From Guillardia theta CCMP2712 (taxonomy: Eukaryota > Protista > Cryptophyta), in assembly GCF_000315625.1 (NCBI RefSeq), contig NW_005434669.1:62001-126000 (forward strand): a stretch of DNA of 64,000 nucleotides, written 5' to 3'. A model generated the notes under the pieces. That model did not search any database, had not been told where the DNA came from, and saw only the letters and a list, made by a program, of their open reading frames with translations. This document shows, piece after piece, positions 13,101-39,148 of the stretch (the stretch's first letter is position 1; the number at the start of each line of letters is the position of its first letter). The position numbers and the translations under genes are program-made.

Positions 13101-16100
13101 AGAGGAAGATGAGCAGGGGGAGGGGAAGAGACGATGAGATTACCTGCTGCTTCTTGTCCTTCTCTGCCAGCTGATTCTTGAGCTTCAGGACCAAAGTTTC
13201 CAGCACCTGCCATGCAAGGTCAGCGCAAGCGGAGGTATATGCAGAAGAGACTCACCTGACTTGGCTTACGGCCCTCCGACTTCTTGATTTCTTCATCTTT
13301 GATCTTTATCTCCTCTTCCTTCATCTTGAGGTTCTCTTCCAGCCTCTCCTTCGTGCGTGAAAGCTCTTCGTTCCTCCTGTTGAGACTCTGCAGTTCGCCG
13401 TTGAGGGCAGAGATGACCTGATCCTTCTCAGCAAAGATGGCATCAGCATCAGCAGAGGCTGTGCTGTGGAGAATGTTGATGTTTCCATGCCCGGCCGTGC
13501 GAGACCGCAGGTTAGAAAGCGCTTCCTGTGTCTTTGCAGCCAACTTCTCCCTCAGCTCCTCGATCGTCGCGTTGTCCAGCTCCTTCTGGCTCATGTACTC
13601 TTCTCTCGCTTGTCGGAGCTGCTCCTGGTACTTGGTGATCATCTCGTTCTTCCTCTTGTTGTTCTTCTCGAGCCTCTCAATCGTCAGCCTCGCCACCTCC
13701 TGCGTGTGTTGAGCGGCTTCTGTGAGACCTGCCTGACTGTCGCCCATGTCAAACTTCGACTTTACCTCGCTCTCTCCTCGATAGGAAACATCCTCAAGAT
13801 CCTTGTTGAGCCTTTCGATCTCGTCCTCCTTGTCCTTGAGCTTCTCCGTTAGGGCGATCAGCTCGTTTCTCATCGCTATGATGGCTTCATGGTCCATCGC
13901 TCGCGCCTCAGCTGCTGAAAGTTCCGGCGGCACCTCGACCTTACTCTTGGAGGAGTGAGAGGAGGGGACTCTACGTAGCGTTGCCCTGCCCTCCATCGCA
14001 TGAGACATCATCGAGCCCTTCCCAGGCATCATGTCTTCTCTCGCTGCGAGCTCCAGCTCCTTGATCTTGCTCTTCAACGCCTCCATTTCAGTCGCTCTCT
14101 TGGCTTCAGCTCCATCCTTCTCCGCCTGCAGGATTATCACCTGCTCCTCAAGCTTTCTCACTTCCTTCTCATTTTGCTGGCACAAGTGTTCCAGATGATT
14201 CTCACGCTCTTGCATCTGACGGACTTGCCGTGAAAGCCGAAGACTCTCGAGCTTGTAGCTTGTCAGCTCGTCTGTCTGTTGGGACAGGCGTTGGAGCACA
14301 GGCTGCATGTTGGAGCTACCGGAAGCACCGCCAGCTTCCCGCAGCTGCTCCATCAGCTGCTTAGCAAACGCCTTCTGATCGTCCAGCTGCACCTTGAGCG
14401 AGGCCGCCTTGTGCTCAGCATCCTCGATCTTCTTCTTCGCGTCCGTCAGATCTTCTAGAGCCTTCTGCTTCTGGTCCGTCAGGTCTCGCAGACTCTGCGC
14501 CCACTCGTCCGCCTGGTCGAGGGAGATGGAGCCGGCAAGTCGTGCCCTCTGCTCCTCCACTTGGCGCTCAAGGGCTCGAATGGTGTTGTGCGACTCGTCG
14601 GAGATCGAGAAGACTTGACTGCTCTTCTTCTCCAGCATCTCCTCCAGGCGGATCGCGTAATCGTCCATGCGAGCAAGTTCCTTGTCCAGGTTGGAGAGCT
14701 TCGACTTCATCTCGTGGATCTGCCGCTCGCGGTCCATCACCTGCCGCTGCAGAGCTCCAGTCTCTGCGCTCTCATCGGACTCGGAGTGGAGCCGGGAGAG
14801 GCACTGACGGAGGGCGTCAAGCTCCTCCGCATGCGCCATGTGCAGCTCCTCCATTGCCTTCGCCTGATCAGTCGCGAGGTCCGCGATCTCTTGCAGCTGG
14901 CTGACTTTGATGTTGAGCTCCGAGATTTCTCCCTCCTGCGCCTGCATTTTAGTTTTCCACTCCTTGGCCTGCTCGGCGGAGATGCTTCCCTCCATCCTCT
15001 GCCTCAGCTCGTTCTCAGTCTCCTCCAGCTCGTGGATGCGAGAGACGTGCTCGATGGACTCGTCCTCTAGAGCCGCGATCCTCTCCTGGATCCTCAGGTT
15101 GTCCTTCTCCATACTCTGCATCCTCTCCAGCGCCAACTCCGCTCGGCGGACGGCATTTCTCTCGGAGACCTCAAGCTTGATCACTTTCTGCGAGAGAGCA
15201 GCGAGCTGCTGCTGGTTCTGGTTGGAATCTCCTGTTGCCAGCTGCTCCAGGCGGGACTCCAACGACGAGGCCTTCTCGCTTGCCTCCTGCAACTTCACTT
15301 TCATCTCCGACATGTCCTGCTCAGTCCTCTCCGCACGTTTCCTGAACGCCTCCACAGAGGCGCGCTCCAGCAGAGCCTTGCTCTCTCGGCTCAGGATGGC
15401 TTTGTGCTTCTCTTGCAAGATGATGTGATCATACTTCAGCTTGTTCCATTCCTCCTTGCTCACGGTCTCAGTGAACCTTCGCTGGAACTCGTTCAATCTC
15501 CTCTCATCCGCTCTCTTGGTCCTCTCAAGGACGCCAATACGATGCTTCAGCCTTTGTTCTTGCCTCGACATCTCGATCACCAGCTCATCGTATCTGTTCC
15601 TCAGCTGCCTTGCCTCTTCGCTCTTTAGCTTCGCAACTCGATCAGCAGTGTCCTGGTCAGCTTGAATGAGAATCAGGTTCCTCTCCGACTCAATCAATTT
15701 CCTTTTCACATCGTCTGGATGAAGATTTTCAGAGAGGTCTTGAAACTTCCTCAAAGCTGAAAACGCTTTCTTGCTCTCTTGCTCGCTCTTGTCTCGCTCT
15801 GTCGCTAATTTCTTCCGCAAGGCTTCAATCTCTGACTCAAGTCCTCCGACCTTCTGTGCGTATTCTTTGTAGATCAGGAGCTGTTGAGTCTTGATAACGT
15901 CGAGATCTTCTCTGTTTCTCTTCATCTCCTCCTTGCTCTTGGCGAGCTCATCTTCCTTGTTGCCAAGATCATCCAAAGTTTGTATCAAGTATGCGTTCAG
16001 GTTTCCAATCTCCTGATTGAGCTTCTGCACAACTTCGTAAGACTCCTGAGACACGACCTCAGCAGTTTGCAACGACGTTGCCCCTAACGTCGCCTCCTTC

Positions 16101-19100
16101 GACGTCTCTTGCGGAGTCGAAACGCTTCGAGCTGGTTGGAAGGCTACCTGTGTGGAAGCAATGCCAGCATTCATTCTGATCTTCTTCAGTTGATCCCTTG
16201 CATCGTCCCTCTCTGACCTCACTTCCACCAGATCTTCAGTCTTCCGTGTCAAGTCCTCGTTCAACCTGCGGATTTCTGACTCGCGCGACTCGATTCTTTC
16301 CTTTGCAATGTCGTAGAGGTTCTGCAAGTTCTCCAGCTGTTTCTCAAGTTGCGCCACTTTCTTCTTCGGTGCTTCAACGAATTCAACCGTCAGGTCAATC
16401 TGACTCTTGCGCGAGTCTCCGGGAGACGCGTACACCGCATTCCCGTTGCTATCAAGCAGATCAAACCAGCCACTTGTGGATCCTCCCCAAACTTCCTTGT
16501 CCAACTTGCCAAAGTCAGAGACGCGAAGCTCGACTTTGCCGAGCAATTGACTGTCGTCTTGAAGATTTTGGGGTCCGACTTCAAAGACATTCACAACCAT
16601 GACATCTGTATTCCGGTTCTGCACGACGAAACTGAACGACTCGTCGAAGGACGGATTGTTGGTGTTCGACTGCGTCTGGCTCTTTCGAGTGTCTCTTGAC
16701 TGCTTCGTCGAAAGACTCAAGTAGCACCTCTGTCTTGGCAGATTCTTGCAAGACCTTACATGCACCTGAAGGCTAGCTTCGTTTCCTAACTCTCCTTCCC
16801 TTAGCGCCTTGGACAGCTGCTCTACAATATTGTTCGATCCGAACAGCATCGGAGGAGGTACGTAAGACATAGCAGCACGAGACGGTGTCCCCTGCAACAG
16901 CGGCTGGCCCTTGGAAGCTTCTGGCTTCCCCGTGCTAGATCCTCCTGATGGTGTTCGAGTGCCCCGCCCACCTCCCGACTGTGAACCAGCAGCAGTAGAT
17001 GAAGAAGACTGACCATCACCAGCCGGTTGCAAACCTGAGGAAGCAGCTTGAGGAGCAGCTGAAGGAGCAGCTTGAGGAGCAGCTGAAGAAGCAGCTTGAG
17101 AAGCAGCTGAAGGAGCAGCTTGAGAAGCAGCTGAAGGAGCAGCTTGAGGAGCAGCTGGAGGTTTTCCAGCAGCACGGGAGGGCTGGTTTCCTTCGCTGAC
17201 ATCCATAGCATCGGTAGCTGCTGCAGCTTCCTCTGGTAGAGCTTGTTCTTGCACGTAAGGACCAGATTGAGAGAGTTGTTCCATGTAAGCGAACTGCTGG
17301 GAGTAGGCCTGTGACAAGCCATCCTTAAGAGCTTGCAGGTCTTGAATAGCTCCTCGAATCGTATTTTTACTCCTGAGGTCGTCTTCAAGAGCCTCGTTCT
17401 TCTCTAGAGCGTCTGAGAGAGCTTTCTGGGTCTCCTTCAGCTCTCTCTCTTTCTCCTCCAGCCTCTGTTCCAGCTTGCGCACCCTGTTCTTCTCCCCAGC
17501 TGAAGGTCCCGAGTCCATCAGAGGCCCGTCGATCCCACTCTTGAGCTGTTCAGCGAATGCATCGAGCTTTTCAATGTCAGCAGCCGACATTCCGAGCCGA
17601 GCAGCTCGTTCTCCCCGCTGCAGAGACAAATGTCGAAGTTGCGATTTCATCTCCAACCGCTCAGTCTCGAGGGCCTCAACTTCTCGCTCGAGCTGCAAGG
17701 TAGCTGCTTTCGCCTTCTCCAGTTCCATCGCAGTCTTCACCTTGTACGCTGAGATGTCCAGGCGGAAACCTGGTTTGTGATCAGTCCATTCAAGTTCACT
17801 GCCTTGATCGAGCTCGTTGACAGGCAAGAAGTCCACGTTCTTGAGAGAAGGGTCGATGCGCTTTAGCTGATCTCGAAGTAATCTGACCTCTTCGTACAAG
17901 TCTTCGATCTTCCTCCACGACTCATTCAGATCCTTCATACGGGAACTGATCTTTCCATGAGAGGTCTCGAGCTCACGTTTGAGCTCCCTAATCTTACTCA
18001 TTGCATCAGACAAGCCAAAGGTCCCACTCTCGAGCTTGGAAATGTGGCTCTCCAACTCAAGGATCTGGTTTTGAGCATCGGCAAGCTGATTCTCCAGGTC
18101 TGATTTTCTCCTCTCTGCTTCGTTCATCTCCTCTTGACGCGCAAAGAAAGCAGTCCGAACTTCATTCTCACGAGCACGATAATGCATCTGCATCCGTTTT
18201 TCAACTTTCTTCTCTTCTTCAGCAGCTTTGTTCAACTGAGTTCGAATGGTCTTGTTTTCTTTTTGCAGCTGGACGTATTTATCAAGCAGCTCACTCTTCT
18301 CTGATTGCAACTGCTCGATCTGATTCTGCATTTCTTCTCGTCTACGTTCAGCCTCATTGTGCTTCTTCTCAGCTTCCATCTTTCGGATTGTGGACAGCGC
18401 TTTCTGAAGTTCAGCTTCTCGTGCGGCAAGTTCGCCAGCTCTGTGGGCGGACTCTTCCTTCAAAGACTTCACCTTTTGAGAGATCTGCTGCATGAGAGCC
18501 TCGTGGTCTTCTTCCCGCTGATCTTCTCGAACCGTCAACTCCGCAACTTTGTCTCTCAGCTGCCTGTTCTCGGACTCCAGATCTTCTTTTGTCTTCGTGA
18601 CTTTATCCAGAGCTGTTCGAGTGGTTTCCAGCTGCTCACTGACTGACGCACGATCCATTGTGATTAATTCCAGCTCATCTTTCGTAGTTTTCAAGGCATC
18701 TTCAAGTTCGCCATTTTTCTCAGTAATCGCCTGGATTTCCTTGATATACTTGAGGACGTTCTTGGTAGATTTCTGCTTGAGTTCATTCGCTTTTGCGCCC
18801 TTCCTCTGGAGATCTTGCTTTTCTACTGTGAGATCCTCTACCTGAGTCTCCAGCTCCCTGATTTGACTCTTCAGATCATCAAGGTCTCTCCGGGCCTTGC
18901 TCAGTTCAGAGTCCAAATCTTTAGTTTTACCAACCTCGTTTGCCAAGTTCCTCTTTGCAGTATTGAGCTCTTCCTTGGTTGACTCAAGTTGTCTCTCAAG
19001 TATCTTGACTTCTGTGTCTGACCTCAGTGTGGACGATTGGAGAGGAGTATCGCCTCTAGTGCGACTAGCGGCGTTTGTTGTGTACGCTGCTTCCAGCTCT

Positions 19101-19949
19101 TGTGTATAGCTCGACATCTCTTCGTCCATTTCAGCGATTTTCTCCAACTGAATTCGGTTCTCATCCTTCGCTTTCTTCAATTCGTCCTTGGTCTTCTTCA
19201 ATTTCTTCTTCGTGTCGGCATGTCCGTCCTCCTCTTCCTGGAGCTTGACGGATTTGATCTCCATGATGACCTGAGCAAGTTGGAACAAGTAAAGAGCATC
19301 GTCGATTCCCAGTTTCTGTTCTTCCTCAGAAATCTTCCATGAAGAAACAGAGTCAAAGAAGCCTTCTGCTTCGTCCATGAGTTTGTCGCGGAGATCAGCA
19401 TTCTGATTCGAATCTGCTTCTAGGAGCTTTGCAATGAGGTCTTTGTCGTTCCTTAGCTGCTGTACAAGCTGCACATCCACGTTTTTCGTTTTCTTTACGA
19501 AAACAGTCTCGTCTGCTTCTGACGACATCCTTGTCTACAGAAGCTCGATCTTTTCAAACGAAGAAAACACCTGTGGAGCAAAACCGTTCAGAAATGCAAG
19601 ACAACCGACAAACCCCACTACACTCGCTACCTCCTTGCAGAATTACTTGGAGATTGATAACACTATTTCTCGTAAAGATGCAACATCTCCACATACTACA
19701 ATTATCTTACCCTCATGCATTCTCGCAACTCAACATTTGAGAGTACTCCAGATAAGACCTCAGTATTGTTATCGTACACTTTCCGCTACTGCACCCAATC
19801 TTACAATGTTCTCCCTCCAGTTTCTTTCTCATGCTCCTTCTGCTCTACCTCCTGATACCCCTGATCCTGCTTCTCATCCTGTCCCTCCTTGCCCTCCTCC
19901 TGCTGCTCCTCCTGCGCCTCATCCGATCACTAGCCAACTTACCCGCCAT
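10174..19949 (-). CDS. CEP290: CEP290/NPHP6-like ciliary transition-zone coiled-coil protein with an internal C2 domain
   Basis: More than 2600 aa, mostly coiled coil. C-terminal signature LNCFDP|AFFDEIEDLKYNH; internal motifs ESGTFGLSDAM and LETERLEMK..LR resemble CEP290. One ~6.3-kb exon (13255-19530) plus several 3' exons. 5' micro-exons uncertain (ATG GCG G|gtaag at 19949). Confidence 0.85.
17036..17161 (-). repeat. In-frame 24-nt minisatellite encoding (AA[P/S]QAA[P/S]S)~5
   Basis: GAAGCAGCTTGAGGAGCAGCTGAA-type units inside the large CEP290 exon. Confidence 0.9.
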
Positions 19950-29531: not shown

Positions 29532-30656
29532 GAGAGGATGACGATGTGGTCAGCACTTCCTTTTTTTTTTAGAGTACCTGTGCATAAAACAGGGATTTCG
29601 TGGGGGAAGGACCGGGGTAGTCATGTCTAAAACTTGAGAAAAAAGCATTTGTTCGGAATATTTTTAAATCGTTTTATAAGACTCGAGAGGGAAAACCGAA
29701 AAATAAAGGACCTCTCTACCACCCCTGGTATCGATCGTTTCCAATGCTCCTGGTTCCCAGTAGACTTAAAGGGGTGATTAAACTATGGTTGGTAAGGGTA
29801 GTATTGACTACCCCACCCTACATTTTTGGCCCATGACTCCAAACATGACTCGTCTCATGACTAGTAACTCTCCAATACAATTTAAAAAATAATTTCGGGG
29901 TTCCCGTATTTAGTTCTCCAATTTTCAGGAAATTGCGCCAGATTATTTTCAAATAATAAGAGATTTACTGAAAGACTTACCTCAAATAAAACGAGAAGCA
30001 AAAGAACACTTTGAAAGTTGTCCCATGACTCCTTTCAAAAATTGTCAATCTAAAAATAAACCAAGTTTCCCTAGCAATTTTGAAAAACTATATGATTCAG
30101 TTCAAATATAAGTCAAATAATATCAACTTTTGAGTCCACTTTCCGATTCTCGGACTCTCGGACGGCATGCCACCGTCCGAGGCGGGCCGAGTAGTGACAG
30201 TGACCGGCTGAGTGGCCCGGGCGCCGCGCCGCAACGTGACGGACTGTCCTCCCGGGCGCCGTGTTCCGAAGTTGAATCATCAACTTCAACTTGGCTTTGG
30301 GCTATGGCACCGTCCAACGGCGAGAAGAGAAAAGACAGCGAGAACCAAACCCAATCCTGCCGACTGCTGTCCCCCAAACTTAACTGATACGTCAAGTTCA
30401 ATGTGACTTGGCGAGGCCCTCAGCAAACAACTTCAAGCCCGGGCCTGCCAGGCCCAATTGAAGAGGCCGGGCTCAGCGGCTACTACGCCGGTCCTGCCCG
30501 GCCAGTCCTGGCACTGCGGCCGGGCGCGGCGGCGCCGCACCGTGAGGCATCCCGCCGTGAGGACGGAAAGTCACGCCGCCCGGCCGGCCGCCGGGCGCCG
30601 GGCCCTGAGTCACGGTGCCCCGGCCGGGCGGAGCCTTCAACGTGACGGATGGTTCC

Positions 30657-31136: not shown

Positions 31137-32589
31137 GAAATGAATCTTTCAGAGATGTAATTTAATGATCGCGCACTGAGTTTTTCCACAAATATACGAC
31201 ACTGTCTACACTACATTGATACAGAACTACAAACGGTTCGAAGCCAGCAACGTGCACCCAATTATCAATGGTACTCATGCTCCCCAGAACAATTCTCATA
31301 TGAGTCGTCCTCAAACGCAGCACTGCACTTCTCCGCAGCGAGCCTAGAGACCGACTGAGAGTAGCCCTTGTCCTCGTCGTAGGACTCCGCGGCCATGAAG
31401 CACGGCTCGTTTGCCGATTACGATGTACAGGAGTGAGGCGCTGCCCGCGTGTTGTGCCGCTCAGTGAAACTTACCCTCTGCCATGCATCCAGTCAGCCCT
31501 CACAACTTGACCACTTCCCACCATCGCAGACGAGACAACAGCTGTCATCAGACTCTCGGATGCCGCCCCCCTCCCGCCCCCTCCCCTTCTCTGCTCCCCA
31601 CAACCACGAGTCAAGTCATCCTCTGCCCGGCCGGGGGCTCTAACCCCCTCGCCCTCATGAAGCATCAAGCACACTGGCAGCCGGCTTATTACCTTTGACT
31701 GTGTTGAAGCCTACCCGGTTGTCTGTCCTGCAAAGCCGGCATCATTCACTTGCAGCGCTATGAGGCGGCTGAGGGGGAGACATACTCGTAGGCCTTCTTC
31801 CGGATGATGGAGTCGCGGATCACCTTGTCCGTTAGTGAGGCGACCGTGTCGATCTCTTCCTCTATCACAGATTGCCGTCAGTGCGTCAGATCCAGCATGG
31901 CTGAAAGCCATCGACGTCTTACCGGAGAGCCCACGGCGGCCGAAGTTGGCGGAAGCTCGCTGGGGTGCGAGGAGAGATTTCTTGAACGCACTAGAGCGAG
32001 AGCCGTTCCTCCCAGACACATCAGTGACGACGATGCCGCCAGTGCGAAGCTCCCAGTTGGAGTCTTGGCCCTTGGACGAGCCGAGAATAGCATTGGCTGT
32101 AGCTGGTGGGCAAGGCATGTGTGAATGCTTGAACGATGTAGCGATAAAGCATACATGGCAGGGCGGCGGCGCCGAGCAGCATGGCGCCCAAGACAGCTCG
32201 CCGAGAGAGAGCGGCAGAGTCATCGTCTGATGAGCTCATGACCGGGCCACGGCAGAGCGAGGTAGAGCTCTACGTCACCAAATCGTTAAGCAAGTCACCA
32301 CATGAGACCAAGCATGTTCCAGCACGCGGTGTGTGTGTGGATGATACCTGTCGGAGCTTGAGGGAGGCTCCATCAAGGGAGGGCGAGAGGGAGAAAGAGG
32401 CAGCAGAGGCCACGAGGGCGGCGAGGGCGGCAGATCGGAGCATGGAACGAAGCGTGTGGTGCGGGAGGGGAGAGGGCATTTCTTTTTATAGATGGGTGAG
32501 CAGGGAAGCAAGCCTGGTGGAGGAAATGGAGAAAAGGGGGGTGGTAACGAGGAGGGTGGGGTCCGAAAGATGAGAAAAGCAAGGGTGGT
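31137..32589 (-). repeat. Left arm of ~1.45-kb inverted segmental duplication
   Basis: Reverse complement of 32936-34427. Mirrored ORFs (31711-32223 vs 33302-33814) have coordinates summing to 65525. Confidence 0.98.
31655..32443 (-). CDS. Small thylakoid-lumen-targeted protein of unknown function, copy 1
   Basis: Signal peptide MLRSAALAALVASAAS|F, transit peptide, twin-arginine SRRAVLGAMLLGAAALPSTANA|. C-terminal exon uncertain. Confidence 0.8.
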
Positions 32590-33034
32590 TGTCAGCACAA
32601 GGTTGGAATCACTTTCAAAGCAGAGCTTTATTAGAGGGTCCGATCAGAGTGACTGTCACGTACTGTATTATTAGTCGGGCGGCGACGGCTTACGTGATCG
32701 GCGATCTACTACTGGTGACCGGGCCCCGGTTCACCGTGGCACACCACTGAGCAGCTTACTTGATCGTACTGATGACCGCCAGCCTAGCCTTACTAGTGCT
32801 GAGGAACTTGATTGCGGCTTTATGAATTCAGATATCAGATACAGTCTAGTCTCATTACATTTGAAGATCATGAGTCAGACGGGGCAACTTGATAAGCCAG
32901 AGTAAGCCGAGTCAGATGACTTACGGTTAGGGACCACCACCCTTGCTTTTCTCATCTTTCGGACCCCACCCTCCTCGTTACCACCCCCCTTTTCTCCATT
33001 TCCTCCACCAGGCTTGCTTCCCTGCTCACCCATC

Positions 33035-33041
33035 TATAAAA
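33035..33041 (+). promoter_or_regulatory. TATA box (TATAAAA), mirrored at 32484-32490 on the minus strand
   Basis: Canonical TATAAAA starting 47 nt upstream of each ATG. Confidence 0.65.
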
Positions 33042-33081
33042 AGAAATGCCCTCTCCCCTCCCGCACCACACGCTTCGTTCC

Positions 33082-33870
33082 ATGCTCCGATCTGCCGCCC
33101 TCGCCGCCCTCGTGGCCTCTGCTGCCTCTTTCTCCCTCTCGCCTTCCCTTGATGGAGCCTCCCTCAAGCTCCGACAGGTATCATCCACACACACACCGCG
33201 TGCTGGAACATGCTTGGTCTCATGTGGTGACTTGCTTAACGATTTGGTGACGTAGAGCTCTACCTCGCTCTGCCGTGGCCCGGTCATGAGCTCATCAGAC
33301 GATGACTCTGCCGCTCTCTCTCGGCGAGCTGTCTTGGGCGCCATGCTGCTCGGCGCCGCCGCCCTGCCATGTATGCTTTATCGCTACATCGTTCAAGCAT
33401 TCACACATGCCTTGCCCACCAGCTACAGCCAATGCTATTCTCGGCTCGTCCAAGGGCCAAGACTCCAACTGGGAGCTTCGCACTGGCGGCATCGTCGTCA
33501 CTGATGTGTCTGGGAGGAACGGCTCTCGCTCTAGTGCGTTCAAGAAATCTCTCCTCGCACCCCAGCGAGCTTCCGCCAACTTCGGCCGCCGTGGGCTCTC
33601 CGGTAAGACGTCGATGGCTTTCAGCCATGCTGGATCTGACGCACTGACGGCAATCTGTGATAGAGGAAGAGATCGACACGGTCGCCTCACTAACGGACAA
33701 GGTGATCCGCGACTCCATCATCCGGAAGAAGGCTTACGAGTATGTCTCCCCCTCAGCCGCCTCATAGCGCTGCAAGTGAATGATGCCGGCTTTGCAGGAC
33801 AGACAACCGGGTAGGCTTCAACACAGTCAAAGGTAATAAGCCGGCTGCCAGTGTGCTTGATGCTTCATGA
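33082..33870 (+). CDS. Small thylakoid-lumen-targeted protein of unknown function, copy 2
   Basis: Same protein as copy 1 with 4-5 short introns. May end near 34027 if a further purine-rich intron is spliced. Confidence 0.8.
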
Positions 33871-35528
33871 GGGCGAGGGGGGTTAGAGGCCCCCGGCCGG
33901 GCAGAGGATGACTTGACTCGTGGTTGTGGGGAGCAGAGAAGGGGAGGGGGCGGGAGGGGGGCGGCATCCGAGAGTCTGATGACAGCTGTTGTCTCGTCTG
34001 CGATGGTGGGAAGTGGTCAAGTTGTGAGGGCTGACTGGATGCATGGCAGAGGGTAAGTTTCACTGAGCGGCACAACACGCGGGCAGCGCCTCACTCCTGT
34101 ACTTCGTAATCGGCAAACGAGCCGTGCTTCATGGCGGAATTTGTTCCTTGCGCTTGGCCGCGGAGTCCTACGACGAGGACAAGGGCTACTCTCAGTCTCA
34201 GTCGGTCTCTAGGCTCGCTGCGGAGAAGTGCAGTGCTGCGTTTGAGGACGACTCATATGAGTATTGTTCTGGGGAGCATGCCATGATGAGTACCATTGAT
34301 AATTGGGTGCACGTTGCTGGCTTCGAACCGTTTGTAGTTCTGTATCAATGTAGTGTAGACAGTGTCGTATATTTGTGGAAAAACTCAGTGCGCGATCATT
34401 AAATTACATCTCTGAAAGATTCATTTCAGTCGACTGCAATCCTGCATCAGCCGCGACACGAGGTCGGATGGTACCGTGGCACCTTGCCTGAGTTTTCTAG
34501 CCGGGTCAGGTGTCTGACGGTGAGAAAGAATGTTACTAGTTAAACTTGCCGGCGTCACTGTCAGTTGCAACGTAATCATACACTACTAGGCTAAATATAA
34601 GTCGGACGTTGGTTCTCGCTGTCTTTTCTCTTCTCGCCGTTTGGCCTGTGCGACAGTGTCAGGGTCAAGCCTCCTCGTCTCTCCTGATTGTCCTCGTACT
34701 GCTTTTTAACTTACCTTTGAGTAAAGGCCTGAGGGCCTCGAGTGGACTCCGGAACAGTTTTCGACGTCTGTGAAACTCAACTCAGGGAAAGTTGAATCGA
34801 CTCAGCCTTGTGAAAATCATCATCGGCGGGCCATCGGGCCCACCCGGGGCTCACGGGCCCCGGCCTGGGGGGACTCCCGGTGACGGTCGGACTCCAAACG
34901 AACTCCGAGGTCAACCCCGGGCCGGGCTCATGTACTTCTGATTGATCCGTTACGTACAGTAGAGGCCTCACTCAAAAATAGTGAAAACCTCTACCCCCTA
35001 CCCAACCGGTTGATATAGCCACTACCCCCTTGATTCCCATCTTTTTCAGCATAGGGTGGGATATATCACCCTACCCATTTTGACAAGCCATAGACCTACC
35101 CGTAGCAGGCTCTCAAGGCCCCAGAAGGGGGGTGATCGGATCATCGGACACTCACTTAGTACTGATTTTGACCCACCCCACCCCCAGAGCCCATTGAAGA
35201 CCCGGTAGAAAGTCACGTTGGATGGCGGGTCACCGGGTTGAAGTTGAAAGATGCTGCGCAATGGTCCCTGGCATGATGGAGTTAGCGATGAGGGAGAGGA
35301 GAGGAGAACGAAGAAGTAGCTGCAGATGGGTGGAGATATTCAAAGCCTGAAGCAGTGGGGGATGGACCTAATAAGGGAAGGGCGAGGGATGGGGTGATAG
35401 CCAGAGGAAAGGAAGGAGTCTGAAGGTTTGAAGAGCGGAGGAGAGCCTTATGGGTTTCTGCAGGCATCTGCTTCGTCTTGCCGTCGATCTCCTGAGCCTT
35501 TGAATGTGCTCTGGCTGAAGTATCAGCC

Positions 35529-38414: not shown

Positions 38415-39148
38415 TCTAAAGATGTTTGATGATGAAAACTCTGACCCACTTACAGACGTTGACAATACAAGGGCACTCCTACGATCTACATATCTCCCGT
38501 CGTATCTCACATGATTTGAATAATGAATATTGCAGTACTATCTTGGTCATGTTTCATATCCGATGCTTTCGTGGATCCTCTTTTCTCCATCATCGCCCAC
38601 AATTTTGATACTCTTGCCCTCCTCTCCTCTCCCTTATCTCCCCTTATCTCCCCTCCCCTCCCCTCCTCTCCCTCCTCTCCCTCCTCCCCCCTTTCCCTTC
38701 CCTCCTCTCCCTCTCCTCTCCTCTCCCTCCTCCTCTTCCCCTCCCCTCCCTCTGTCTCACGTCCTCGCCCTCGCCAGTGTTTTGGACATTCCCCCCGACT
38801 TCGACAGCCTGTACTCTGGTTAGAACCAAAAGGGGGTAGAGGGCCGAAAATTTGATTACTACCGGTACTTTTAAGCTACGAAGCTCTACGGAAATCAAGG
38901 GTGGGGTCATATTTCGTTCTTGCCAGGGTAGTAGGGTAGTCCACATACAAACTCGAATCCAATGATTGAGGTGGAGGGAGAAACAGGAGGAGGAAGGAGG
39001 AGGGCAAACATGAACACGAAGGAGAGGGTTGAAATCCGTTTCAGAACTAGATGTTTGTCGTTTCTGTAGAGTCCTCAACTCTTTCATTTCGATTTTCTCC
39101 TCTTACTTCAAGAATTCGCAGAAACACGACAAGAAAAATCAAATCTGT

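What the first reader, a model, noticed from the sequence alone, without database searches (positions are those of the whole stretch)
31137..34427. Head-to-head inverted gene pair encoding an unrecognised thylakoid-lumen (Tat) protein
Seen: two ~1.45-kb near-identical inverted arms around a unique 346-bp spacer, each with a TATA box and a gene pointing outward. The spliced product has a signal peptide ending ASAAS|F, a transit peptide, then SRRAVLGAMLLGAAALPSTANA| and a ~85-aa mature part (ILGSSKGQDSNWELRTGGIVVTDRASANFGRRGLSEEEIDTVASLTDKVIRDSIIRKKAYETDNRVGFNTVKG...). Established: ASA-F leaders target complex plastids, and RR + hydrophobic + AxA is a Tat lumen signal. Cryptophytes keep their phycobiliprotein antenna in the lumen, and their alpha-subunit genes often occur as divergent pairs. 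Inference: a dosage-amplified, lineage-specific lumenal photosystem/antenna accessory or linker protein. It has no Cys, so it is not itself a bilin carrier.
Basis: partly seen in the sequence, partly recalled or inferred. Interest (0 to 1): 0.82.

Follow-up and report, generated by a model that had tools for sequence, protein, structure and literature searches.

The report
Duplicated cryptophyte gene for lumen protein
Two head-to-head, near-identical copies of a small Guillardia theta gene encode a basic, cysteine-free 10-kDa protein addressed to the thylakoid lumen; it belongs to an undescribed family seen only in cryptophyte algae, and its function is still unknown.

Summary
The inverted duplication is real. 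The arms are 31137-32593 and 32932-34427, with a 338-nt unique spacer. Two independent DNA data sets show the arms at about twice the spacer depth, and both outer junctions are present.

Each arm carries a complete six-exon gene.
- The proposed 60-nt intron is coding.
- A missed 217-nt last intron gives the C-terminus ...NTVKEGKFH.
- The precursor is 172 aa and the predicted mature part is 97 aa.

The public model GUITHDRAFT_132668 skips the twin-arginine exon. The leader (signal peptide AAS|F, transit peptide, SRR + hydrophobic core + ANA) is conserved in every relative that covers it.

Exhaustive searches found about 25 relatives. All look cryptophyte, and the two named ones are Rhodomonas and Hemiselmis. 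There is also a 53%-identical paralog on another contig, probably this scan's note s1-437460. Nothing matches Pfam, PDB or the phycoerythrin alpha family.

The window genes sit on a long branch and lack the family's conserved C-terminal motif. They are still under purifying selection: 7 synonymous and 0 replacement changes against a wild ortholog.

Mature proteins are basic (pI about 10), have no membrane segment, and are predicted to be mostly disordered with one helix. Expression looks low or conditional. A role as an antenna or photosystem adaptor remains an untested inference.

The parts
31137..32593 (-). Left arm of the inverted duplication (1457 nt). It carries gene copy 1, transcribed leftward.
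   Evidence: the junction into the left flank is seen as a loose end in X1 and X2
32594..32931 (.). Unique 338-nt spacer between the two divergent promoters
   Evidence: single-depth unitig covering 32560-32965 in X1 and X2
32932..34427 (+). Right arm of the inverted duplication (1496 nt). It carries gene copy 2, transcribed rightward.
   Evidence: arm unitig at about twice the spacer depth
33035..33043 (+). TATA box of the right copy, 47 nt before the ATG
   Evidence: read from the sequence
32482..32490 (-). TATA box of the left copy (mirror image of the right one)
   Evidence: read from the sequence
33082..33177 (+). Right exon 1: ER signal peptide (..VASAAS|F) and the start of the transit peptide
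   Evidence: splice joint 33177/33256 in an X7 contig; translation
33256..33370 (+). Right exon 2: rest of the transit peptide, the SRR twin-arginine motif and the hydrophobic core. The public model P0001 omits this exon.
   Evidence: X7 contig covering 33254-33370; translation; P0001 sequence
33423..33602 (+). Right exon 3: (S)TANA| cleavage site plus the first 54 residues and the first base of residue 55 of the mature protein.
   Evidence: X7 contig continuous over 33419-33601 and joined to 33663; translation; conserved in the family
33664..33739 (+). Right exon 4: the predicted amphipathic helix (EEEIDTVASLTDKVIRDSIIRKKAY)
   Evidence: joints 33602/33664 and 33739/33798; translation; AF2 helix at residues 56-77
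33798..33832 (+). Right exon 5 (TDNRVGFNTVK)
   Evidence: joints at both ends; translation
34050..34066 (+). Right exon 6, coding part: (E)GKFH plus the TGA stop. The 3' UTR follows to about 34100-34170.
   Evidence: joint 33832/34050 skipping 217 nt, GT..AG; translation
32348..32443 (-). Left exon 1
   Evidence: mirror of the right copy with one synonymous difference
32155..32269 (-). Left exon 2
   Evidence: identical to the right copy
31923..32102 (-). Left exon 3
   Evidence: identical to the right copy
31786..31861 (-). Left exon 4
   Evidence: one synonymous difference from the right copy. The left-copy allele (C at the position matching 33734) makes up 14.4 of 19.1 depth in the X7 RNA contigs, so both copies are transcribed.
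31693..31727 (-). Left exon 5
31461..31477 (-). Left exon 6, coding part plus stop

Best explanation
Shown:
- A 1.46-kb segment of the Guillardia theta nuclear genome carries a complete TATA-driven six-exon gene. It is present as two head-to-head copies that are almost identical, either because the duplication is recent or because gene conversion keeps them alike.
- Both copies are transcribed and spliced.
- Both encode the same 172-aa precursor.

Read from the sequence and conserved in all relatives:
- An ER signal peptide is cut before a phenylalanine. A Ser/Thr-rich plastid transit peptide follows. Then comes a twin-arginine lumen-targeting domain (SRRAVL, a Gly/Ala-rich hydrophobic core, and ANA).
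- The protein should therefore cross the four plastid envelope membranes, enter the thylakoid lumen by the Tat route, and be trimmed to a 97-aa mature protein.
- The mature protein is basic (pI about 10), hydrophilic and free of cysteine.

Family placement:
- It belongs to an uncharacterised family found only in cryptophytes. Typical members are 105-110 aa and end in a conserved GINPxFGGSSG..TGA motif.
- The window genes are a fast-evolved sister of the G. theta paralog on contig 32. They have replaced that C-terminal motif with a short tail created by a new last intron.

Inferred, not shown:
- The protein is mostly disordered with one amphipathic helix, carries no membrane segment or cofactor motif, and is basic in a lumen packed with acidic phycobiliproteins.
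- It therefore most likely acts as a small extrinsic adaptor that folds on binding a lumenal partner. That partner could be phycobiliprotein, or the lumenal face of a photosystem or chlorophyll a/c antenna.
- The truncated, weakly expressed window pair would be a conditional or modulating variant of the canonical paralog.
For: Duplication:
- Arms and their differences.
- Double depth and both outer junctions in two DNA runs.

Gene model:
- Four GT..AG joints in X7 contigs, plus a contig end consistent with the fifth.
- Both copies give identical products with canonical splice sites.
- Both alleles at 33734 are present in the RNA contigs.

Identity:
- The public model is P0001 = GUITHDRAFT_132668 of Guillardia theta CCMP2712.

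Selection:
- A wild ortholog on metagenome contig L004 is 91% identical in DNA, with introns 90-95% identical.
- Its mature protein is identical: 7 synonymous and 0 replacement changes. The leader has 2 synonymous and 3 conservative replacements.

Family:
- phmmer over 1.84 billion representatives returned five relatives beyond the query's own public model, plus one chance hit.
- Word and profile searches returned about 25 clusters. The two named ones are Rhodomonas abbreviata and Hemiselmis andersenii.
- RR plus AxA is present in every sequence that covers the leader intact.
- A paralog lies on G000:C32.
- The tree joins the window gene and the C32 type with support 87/87, with a long branch of 0.54 for the window gene.

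Properties:
- pI 9.4-10 and no Cys.
- No membrane segment (maximum KD19 0.16-0.38), hydrophobic moment 0.51 over the helix, and 35-41% G/S/T/N.
- AF2 pLDDT is about 55, with a single helix.

Open question it bears on:
- Where phycobiliproteins dock in the lumen is unknown (PMC11088674, PMC10643455).
Against: - No experiment or data set here shows the protein, its location or a partner.
- Expression looks low. There were no reads in a 6% sample of raw RNA run X12. Next to no words were found in 12 other RNA-like runs. No transcript-derived protein for the window-type gene is in the databases, whereas a close relative's counterpart of the C32 paralog has one.
- The window genes lack the most conserved block of the family, so they may not share its function.
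- Sequence-assigned chains of the cryptophyte PSI and PSII cryo-EM structures do not include this family.
- The unassigned PSII chains Unk1-3 are transmembrane helices (PMC11133340). The mature protein has no such helix.
- Basic charge and restriction to cryptophytes fit many other lumenal roles.
Confidence: 0.6

Rival explanations
1. The protein is lumenal but has nothing to do with light harvesting. It could be, for example, a stress, assembly or ion-related factor peculiar to cryptophytes. The pair would be just a recent neutral duplication.
For: - No pigment-binding residue or motif.
- Low or conditional expression.
- Absent from all sequence-assigned photosystem and antenna structures.
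- Other cryptophyte genomic contigs carry single copies.
Against: The family's distribution matches that of the lumenal phycobiliprotein antenna. It is basic and disordered like known antenna linkers (the linker comparison rests on my own knowledge). Neither point is specific.
Confidence: 0.25
2. The twin-arginine domain is not cleaved. It stays as a single membrane anchor, as in the Rieske protein, so the product is a thylakoid membrane protein with a lumenal tail. It might be one of the unassigned single-helix chains in cryptophyte PSII maps.
For: - A sub-threshold Pfam match of the RR region to the PetC (Rieske) anchor: E 0.004, 17 bits against a cut-off of 37.
- Unk1-3 in the Chroomonas PSII-ACPII structure are unidentified single helices (PMC11133340).
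- The leader's hydrophobic window reaches KD19 1.57.
Against: - Small residues at -3 and -1 (ANA, ASA, AGA, AHA, VNA) are kept in every member, which is what a cleaved signal needs.
- The core is Gly/Ala-rich and only moderately hydrophobic.
- The Pfam score is far below its threshold.
Confidence: 0.08
3. The window pair is a decaying or functionless offshoot of the family: truncated, fast-evolving and barely expressed.
For: Long branch, loss of the conserved C-terminal motif, and weak RNA evidence.
Against: - The mature protein is identical in a wild relative whose introns differ by 5-10%, with 7 synonymous and 0 replacement changes. By my estimate the chance of that under neutrality is about 1 in 10,000.
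- Both copies are intact, with canonical splice sites, and both are transcribed.
Confidence: 0.05
4. The inverted pair is an assembly artefact, for example two alleles or a fold-back chimera.
For: The arms are nearly identical, and palindromic joins are a known artefact type.
Against: - Arm depth is about twice the spacer depth in two DNA runs from different years.
- Both arm-flank junctions and both arm variants (with and without the 23-, 6- and 8-nt stretches) are recovered.
Confidence: 0.02

Closest known systems
Cryptophyte phycoerythrin alpha subunits, alpha-1 type (CpeA, Pfam PF02972)
   Same: - Nuclear genes found only in cryptophytes.
- Small (8-10 kDa) lumenal products.
- The same tripartite leader with a twin-arginine domain.
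- Genes arranged as divergently transcribed pairs (PMC5784005).
   Different: - No sequence or profile similarity.
- No FDHRGC motif and no cysteine, so no bilin attachment.
- The alpha pairs combine one gene with and one without the lumen signal. Here the two genes are identical.
PsaQ, the cryptophyte-specific lumenal PSI subunit (PDB 8WM6)
   Same: Restricted to cryptophytes, extrinsic on the lumenal side, and proposed to help phycobiliprotein docking (PMC11088674).
   Different: PsaQ is a four-helix, PsbQ-like protein with two chlorophylls, extending to at least residue 234 (PMC11088674). This family is about 100 aa, mostly disordered, and has no PDB match.
Phycobilisome linker polypeptides of red algae and cyanobacteria
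   Same: Basic, largely colourless proteins with disordered stretches that fold onto acidic phycobiliproteins. This comparison rests on my own knowledge. It is a resemblance in how the protein might work.
   Different: No homology to any linker chain in solved phycobilisome structures. Linkers act on the stromal side. No binding has been shown here.
Psb-gamma / CCPII-S / CAL-II, the cryptophyte PSII antenna linker
   Same: Cryptophyte-specific, thread-like protein that stitches complexes together (PMC11169493, PMC11316039).
   Different: That linker has a transmembrane helix and binds chlorophyll. The mature protein here has no hydrophobic segment and no sequence match.
Plant Tat-imported lumenal extrinsic subunits (PsbP, PsbQ, PsaN)
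   Same: Same import route. Small, basic extrinsic proteins (from my own knowledge).
   Different: No Pfam or PDB similarity.

Membership tests
Complex-plastid (cryptophyte) stromal import leader | N-terminal ER signal peptide with an AxA-type cleavage site followed by an aromatic residue (F) at +1 of the transit peptide | tested here: met
   ..VASAAS|FSLSP in both copies. The motif is ASA|F or AAA|F in all full-length relatives.
Thylakoid Tat (twin-arginine) substrates | Invariant RR before a moderately hydrophobic core that ends in AxA | tested here: met
   SRRAVLGAMLLGAAALPSTANA in the window. RR and small residues at -3 and -1 are kept in every relative that covers the region, while the rest of the leader varies.
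Thylakoid Tat (twin-arginine) substrates | Import that depends on the pH gradient and on RR; protein found in the lumen | not testable with these tools
   Needs an import assay or proteomics.
Cryptophyte phycoerythrin alpha subunit (PF02972) | Match to the Pfam model, or profile similarity to the G. theta alpha subunits | tested here: not met
   No Pfam hit at E up to 10. hhalign probability 0.3%. The same model finds 24 matching stretches elsewhere in this genome.
Cryptophyte phycoerythrin alpha subunit (PF02972) | Conserved bilin-binding cysteine in the FDHRGC motif | tested here: not met
   No Cys in any of the six full-length members' mature parts checked or in any aligned mature stretch.
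Known PSII/PSI lumenal extrinsic families (PsbQ/PsbQ', PsbU, PsbP, Psb31, PsaQ) | Sequence or profile match to Pfam models or to chains of solved photosystem structures | tested here: not met
   nothing better than E 0.4, and those are chance hits (arylmalonate decarboxylase, Sed5).
Undescribed cryptophyte lumenal basic 11-kDa family (defined here) | N-terminal block N(W)QL..GG..T.V, central block G.R.S.F, and helix block L(T).K...S.I.K | tested here: met
   E 1.5e-12 to P0003 and 1e-8 to fragments of the C32 paralog. Alignments A2 and A5.
Undescribed cryptophyte lumenal basic 11-kDa family (defined here) | Conserved C-terminal GINPxFGGSSG(I/V)(F/M)TGA(K/E) block | tested here: not met
   The window genes end ..VGFNTVKEGKFH after a lineage-specific last intron. 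They are a truncated subtype.

The most novel reading that the evidence does not exclude
The family is the missing lumenal docking factor of the cryptophyte antenna. It would be a basic protein that folds on binding and tethers acidic phycobiliprotein tetramers to the lumenal face of the photosystems or the chlorophyll a/c antenna. That makes it a functional analogue of phycobilisome linkers, invented after the phycobilisome was lost. The duplicated, C-terminally truncated window genes would encode a variant that binds one partner but not the other, and so tunes coupling.
Probability: 0.15. Interest if true: 0.8.

Novelty: new member of a known kind. Interest (0 to 1): 0.45.

Why it matters
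How the soluble phycobiliproteins in the cryptophyte lumen are positioned, and how they pass energy to the photosystems, is an acknowledged open question (PMC10643455, PMC11088674). Few cryptophyte-only lumenal proteins are known.

This work adds a conserved, previously unnoticed family of small Tat-routed lumen proteins, with corrected gene models. The reference annotation had lost the targeting exon, so proteome searches and localisation predictions would have missed it. The family is now a concrete candidate to look for in lumen proteomes and in unassigned cryo-EM density.

The locus is also a clean example of a young inverted gene duplication in G. theta, with evidence that both copies are transcribed.

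Tried and rejected
- The exon-4 queries were one base out of frame. The NMDA-receptor hits are meaningless. The frame was corrected, and exon 4 was then covered through P0001.
- **Exon-wise and whole-model Pfam and PDB searches.** Nothing found.
- **Profile searches against PDB.** They gave only chance hits at E 0.4-1.2. The C-terminal motif searched alone gave nothing.
- **ESM Atlas.** The best feature score was 0.77, for a cluster auto-named 'RxLR effector'. That is below the level reached by shuffled sequences. The structure hits come from an Atlas model with pLDDT 0.44. Both were disregarded. The canonical member gave no usable hit.
- **P0007.** This repeat protein matched only through an NGGIVITDVSG-like word, which is chance.
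- **AlphaFold.** Both models (window protein with 14 aligned sequences, canonical paralog with 21) had pLDDT of about 55. I did not run fold search, because low-confidence models give meaningless matches.
- **Raw RNA run X12.** No read fell on the gene in the 6% of the run that was read, so transcript ends and expression level could not be measured.
- **Upstream part of the wild ortholog contig (L004:1-715).** It matches nothing in G. theta, so the ancestral arrangement could not be reconstructed.
- **Literature.** No paper names GUITHDRAFT_132668. The proteomics paper has no supplement held here.
- **Outer-arm ORF at 34124-34402.** The left arm has 23- and 8-nt deletions that break the frame, so it is not coding.
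- **Joining exons.** The complete 172-aa product was never assembled or searched. Searches used exon references, the stop-free genomic ORF with a region restriction, and the public model P0001, which already joins exons 3-5.
Full report
**Observation**

The window is part of Guillardia theta CCMP2712. G000 has 87.1 Mb in 669 contigs, and the protein encoded here is NCBI's GUITHDRAFT_132668.

The inverted repeat is real. The arms are 31137-32593 and 32932-34427, around a 338-nt unique spacer. They differ by:
- two substitutions inside the coding sequence, at 33144 and 33734, both synonymous;
- two substitutions in the 3' region, at 34103 and 34262;
- a small complex 2-nt indel patch in the last intron;
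- 23-, 6- and 8-nt stretches missing from the left arm's 3' region.

Contigs of two DNA runs, from 2021 and 2011, were laid on the right arm. They give a single-depth spacer unitig (65 and 7.2) and an arm unitig at about double depth (115 and 12). Loose ends at 34427 continue into the reverse complement of the left flank, and other contigs continue into the right flank. Two copies therefore exist in the DNA, and an assembly artefact is excluded for practical purposes.

**Gene model**

Run X7 holds spliced contigs, so it contains RNA-derived sequence. Its joints give four GT..AG introns, and a contig end is consistent with a fifth (33371-33422). The exons on the right arm are:
- 33082-33177
- 33256-33370
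- 33423-33602
- 33664-33739
- 33798-33832
- 34050-34066 (including the stop)

One contig is continuous over 33419-33601, and this stretch encodes the SAFKKS block that is conserved in the paralog and the family.

The precursor is 172 aa and the predicted mature part is 97 aa. The left copy has the same exons, canonical splice sites and an identical product. Both alleles at 33734 occur in the X7 contigs: 14.4 of 19.1 depth is the left-copy allele. So both copies are transcribed.

The public model P0001 (149 aa) skips exon 2, which holds the twin-arginine motif, and reads through the last intron.

Searches used exon references, the stop-free genomic ORF with a region restriction, and parts of P0001, which already joins exons 3-5.

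**Coding constraint**

A 2-kb metagenome contig (L004, ENA ERZ930064) carries an ortholog that is 91% identical in DNA. Its introns are 90-95% identical, and all five intron boundaries are kept. The mature protein is identical, with 7 synonymous and 0 replacement changes. The leader has 2 synonymous and 3 conservative replacements.

If roughly a quarter of random changes are synonymous, seven out of seven has a chance near 1 in 10,000 (my estimate). The gene is therefore under purifying selection.

Homology between L004 and the window begins at 32927, right at the inner edge of the arm. The 715 nt upstream in L004 hold no inverted copy and match nothing in G. theta. Genomic contigs of two other cryptophyte relatives also carry single copies. 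The head-to-head duplication is therefore a local feature of this locus. The complete identity of introns 1-4 between the arms points to recency or gene conversion.

**Family**

- Pfam gives nothing at E up to 10 for the window protein or six relatives, apart from sub-threshold noise.
- PDB sequence and profile searches give nothing.
- phmmer of the mature part against 1.84 billion cluster representatives found only seven proteins at E of 0.001 or better. One of them is a chance hit.
- Word and profile searches of 5.8 billion proteins raised this to about 25 clusters. All are cryptophyte-like, and the two that carry organism names are Rhodomonas abbreviata and Hemiselmis andersenii.
- Every sequence that covers the N-terminus intact has the same three-part leader, with an invariant RR and small residues at -3 and -1 of the predicted cut.
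- G. theta has one more paralog, on contig 32 (L003:1503-2343, 53% identical over exon 3). It has the same first four intron positions.
- In a maximum-likelihood tree the window gene is sister to that paralog type (support 87/87) but sits on a long branch: 0.54 against a median of 0.10.
- Typical members end in a strongly conserved GINPxFGGSSG..TGA block. The window genes lack it.

**Relation to known lumen proteins**

- The cryptophyte phycoerythrin alpha model PF02972 finds 24 matching stretches in this genome, several in divergent pairs, and none at this locus.
- A profile of eight G. theta alpha subunits shows no similarity to the family (hhalign probability 0.3%).
- PsaQ, Psb-gamma/CCPII-S/CAL-II, PsbQ', PsbU and PsbO are all sequence-assigned chains in cryptophyte cryo-EM entries and do not match (PMC11088674, PMC11169493, PMC11316039, PMC12695738).
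- The unassigned chains Unk1-3 of Chroomonas PSII are single transmembrane helices (PMC11133340). The mature protein has no hydrophobic segment.

**Properties and likely mode of action**

Mature family members:
- are 10-11 kDa;
- have pI 9.4-10 and a net charge of +4 to +7;
- contain 35-41% Gly/Ser/Thr/Asn;
- have no Cys.

AlphaFold2 models built with 14 and 21 aligned sequences have pLDDT of about 55, with one helix (mature residues 56-77) of moderate amphipathicity. I did not run a fold search on such models.

The best reading is a small extrinsic lumenal protein that is disordered alone and folds on a partner. The restriction to cryptophytes and the basic charge make the phycobiliprotein antenna, or the lumenal face of the photosystems, the most attractive partner. 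This remains an inference.

Several points weigh against an abundant structural role for the window genes. Spliced contigs appear in one RNA-like run only. Twelve other runs of the same species label hold almost none of the words. A 6% sample of a raw RNA run gave no read. No transcript-derived protein of the window type is in the databases, whereas a close relative's counterpart of the contig-32 paralog has one.

**Verdict**

The targeting inference is well supported by conservation. The protein is a new, unannotated cryptophyte-only family member, not a known lumen family. The proposed antenna or linker function is plausible but untested.

This scan's note s1-437460 reads 'apparently highly expressed, unrecognised Tat-targeted thylakoid-lumen protein', spans 841 letters and lies on another piece. 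It has exactly the ATG-to-stop length of the contig-32 paralog, so it is probably the same family seen independently on other DNA. I could not verify this.

Noticed in passing
window 30316-30348 and 34609-34641: Two perfectly complementary 33-nt copies of a very abundant short dispersed repeat bracket the gene pair, 790 nt left and 182 nt right of the arms. The repeat gave at least 369 first-look candidates in the genome. Its depth was about 49,000 against 65 for unique DNA in X1, and it is also present in RNA runs. It looks like the 37-46-nt repeat of scan notes s1-437115 and s1-441241. Whether it played a part in the duplication is unknown.
   Followed up: partly
G000:C32:556884-557724 (L003:1503-2343): A divergent paralog of the window gene (53% identical over exon 3) with the same leader and the same first four intron positions. 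It keeps the family's conserved C-terminal motif. Its transcript-like counterpart P0009 comes from a close relative. Its ATG-to-stop length of 841 nt equals that of scan note s1-437460.
   Followed up: partly
window 33082-34066 and the public model P0001: The NCBI/JGI model GUITHDRAFT_132668 is wrong in two places. It skips exon 2 (the transit peptide end and the twin-arginine motif), inserting 9 intron-derived residues instead. It also reads through the last intron, which adds 12 false C-terminal residues.
   Followed up: yes
L004:1-715 against window 32927: Homology between the wild ortholog contig and G. theta stops within 5 nt of the inner edge of the duplicated arm. The relative's upstream DNA matches nothing in G. 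theta. The duplication breakpoint therefore coincides with a break in synteny between the species, or the metagenome contig is chimeric.
   Followed up: partly
window 34124-34402 and mirror 31160-31400: A 92-aa ORF in the outer part of the right arm, acidic with two Cys. It is broken in the left arm by 23- and 8-nt deletions and lies beyond the RNA contig coverage. It is most likely non-coding 3' flank.
   Followed up: partly
window 38617-38763: A CT-rich low-complexity tract of overlapping CCCTCC/TCTCC units, about 150 nt long.
   Followed up: no
window 13220-19528: An uninterrupted 2102-aa ORF on the minus strand. A first-reader note (s1-453523) calls it CEP290 with an inserted C2 domain. 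I did not examine it.
   Followed up: no
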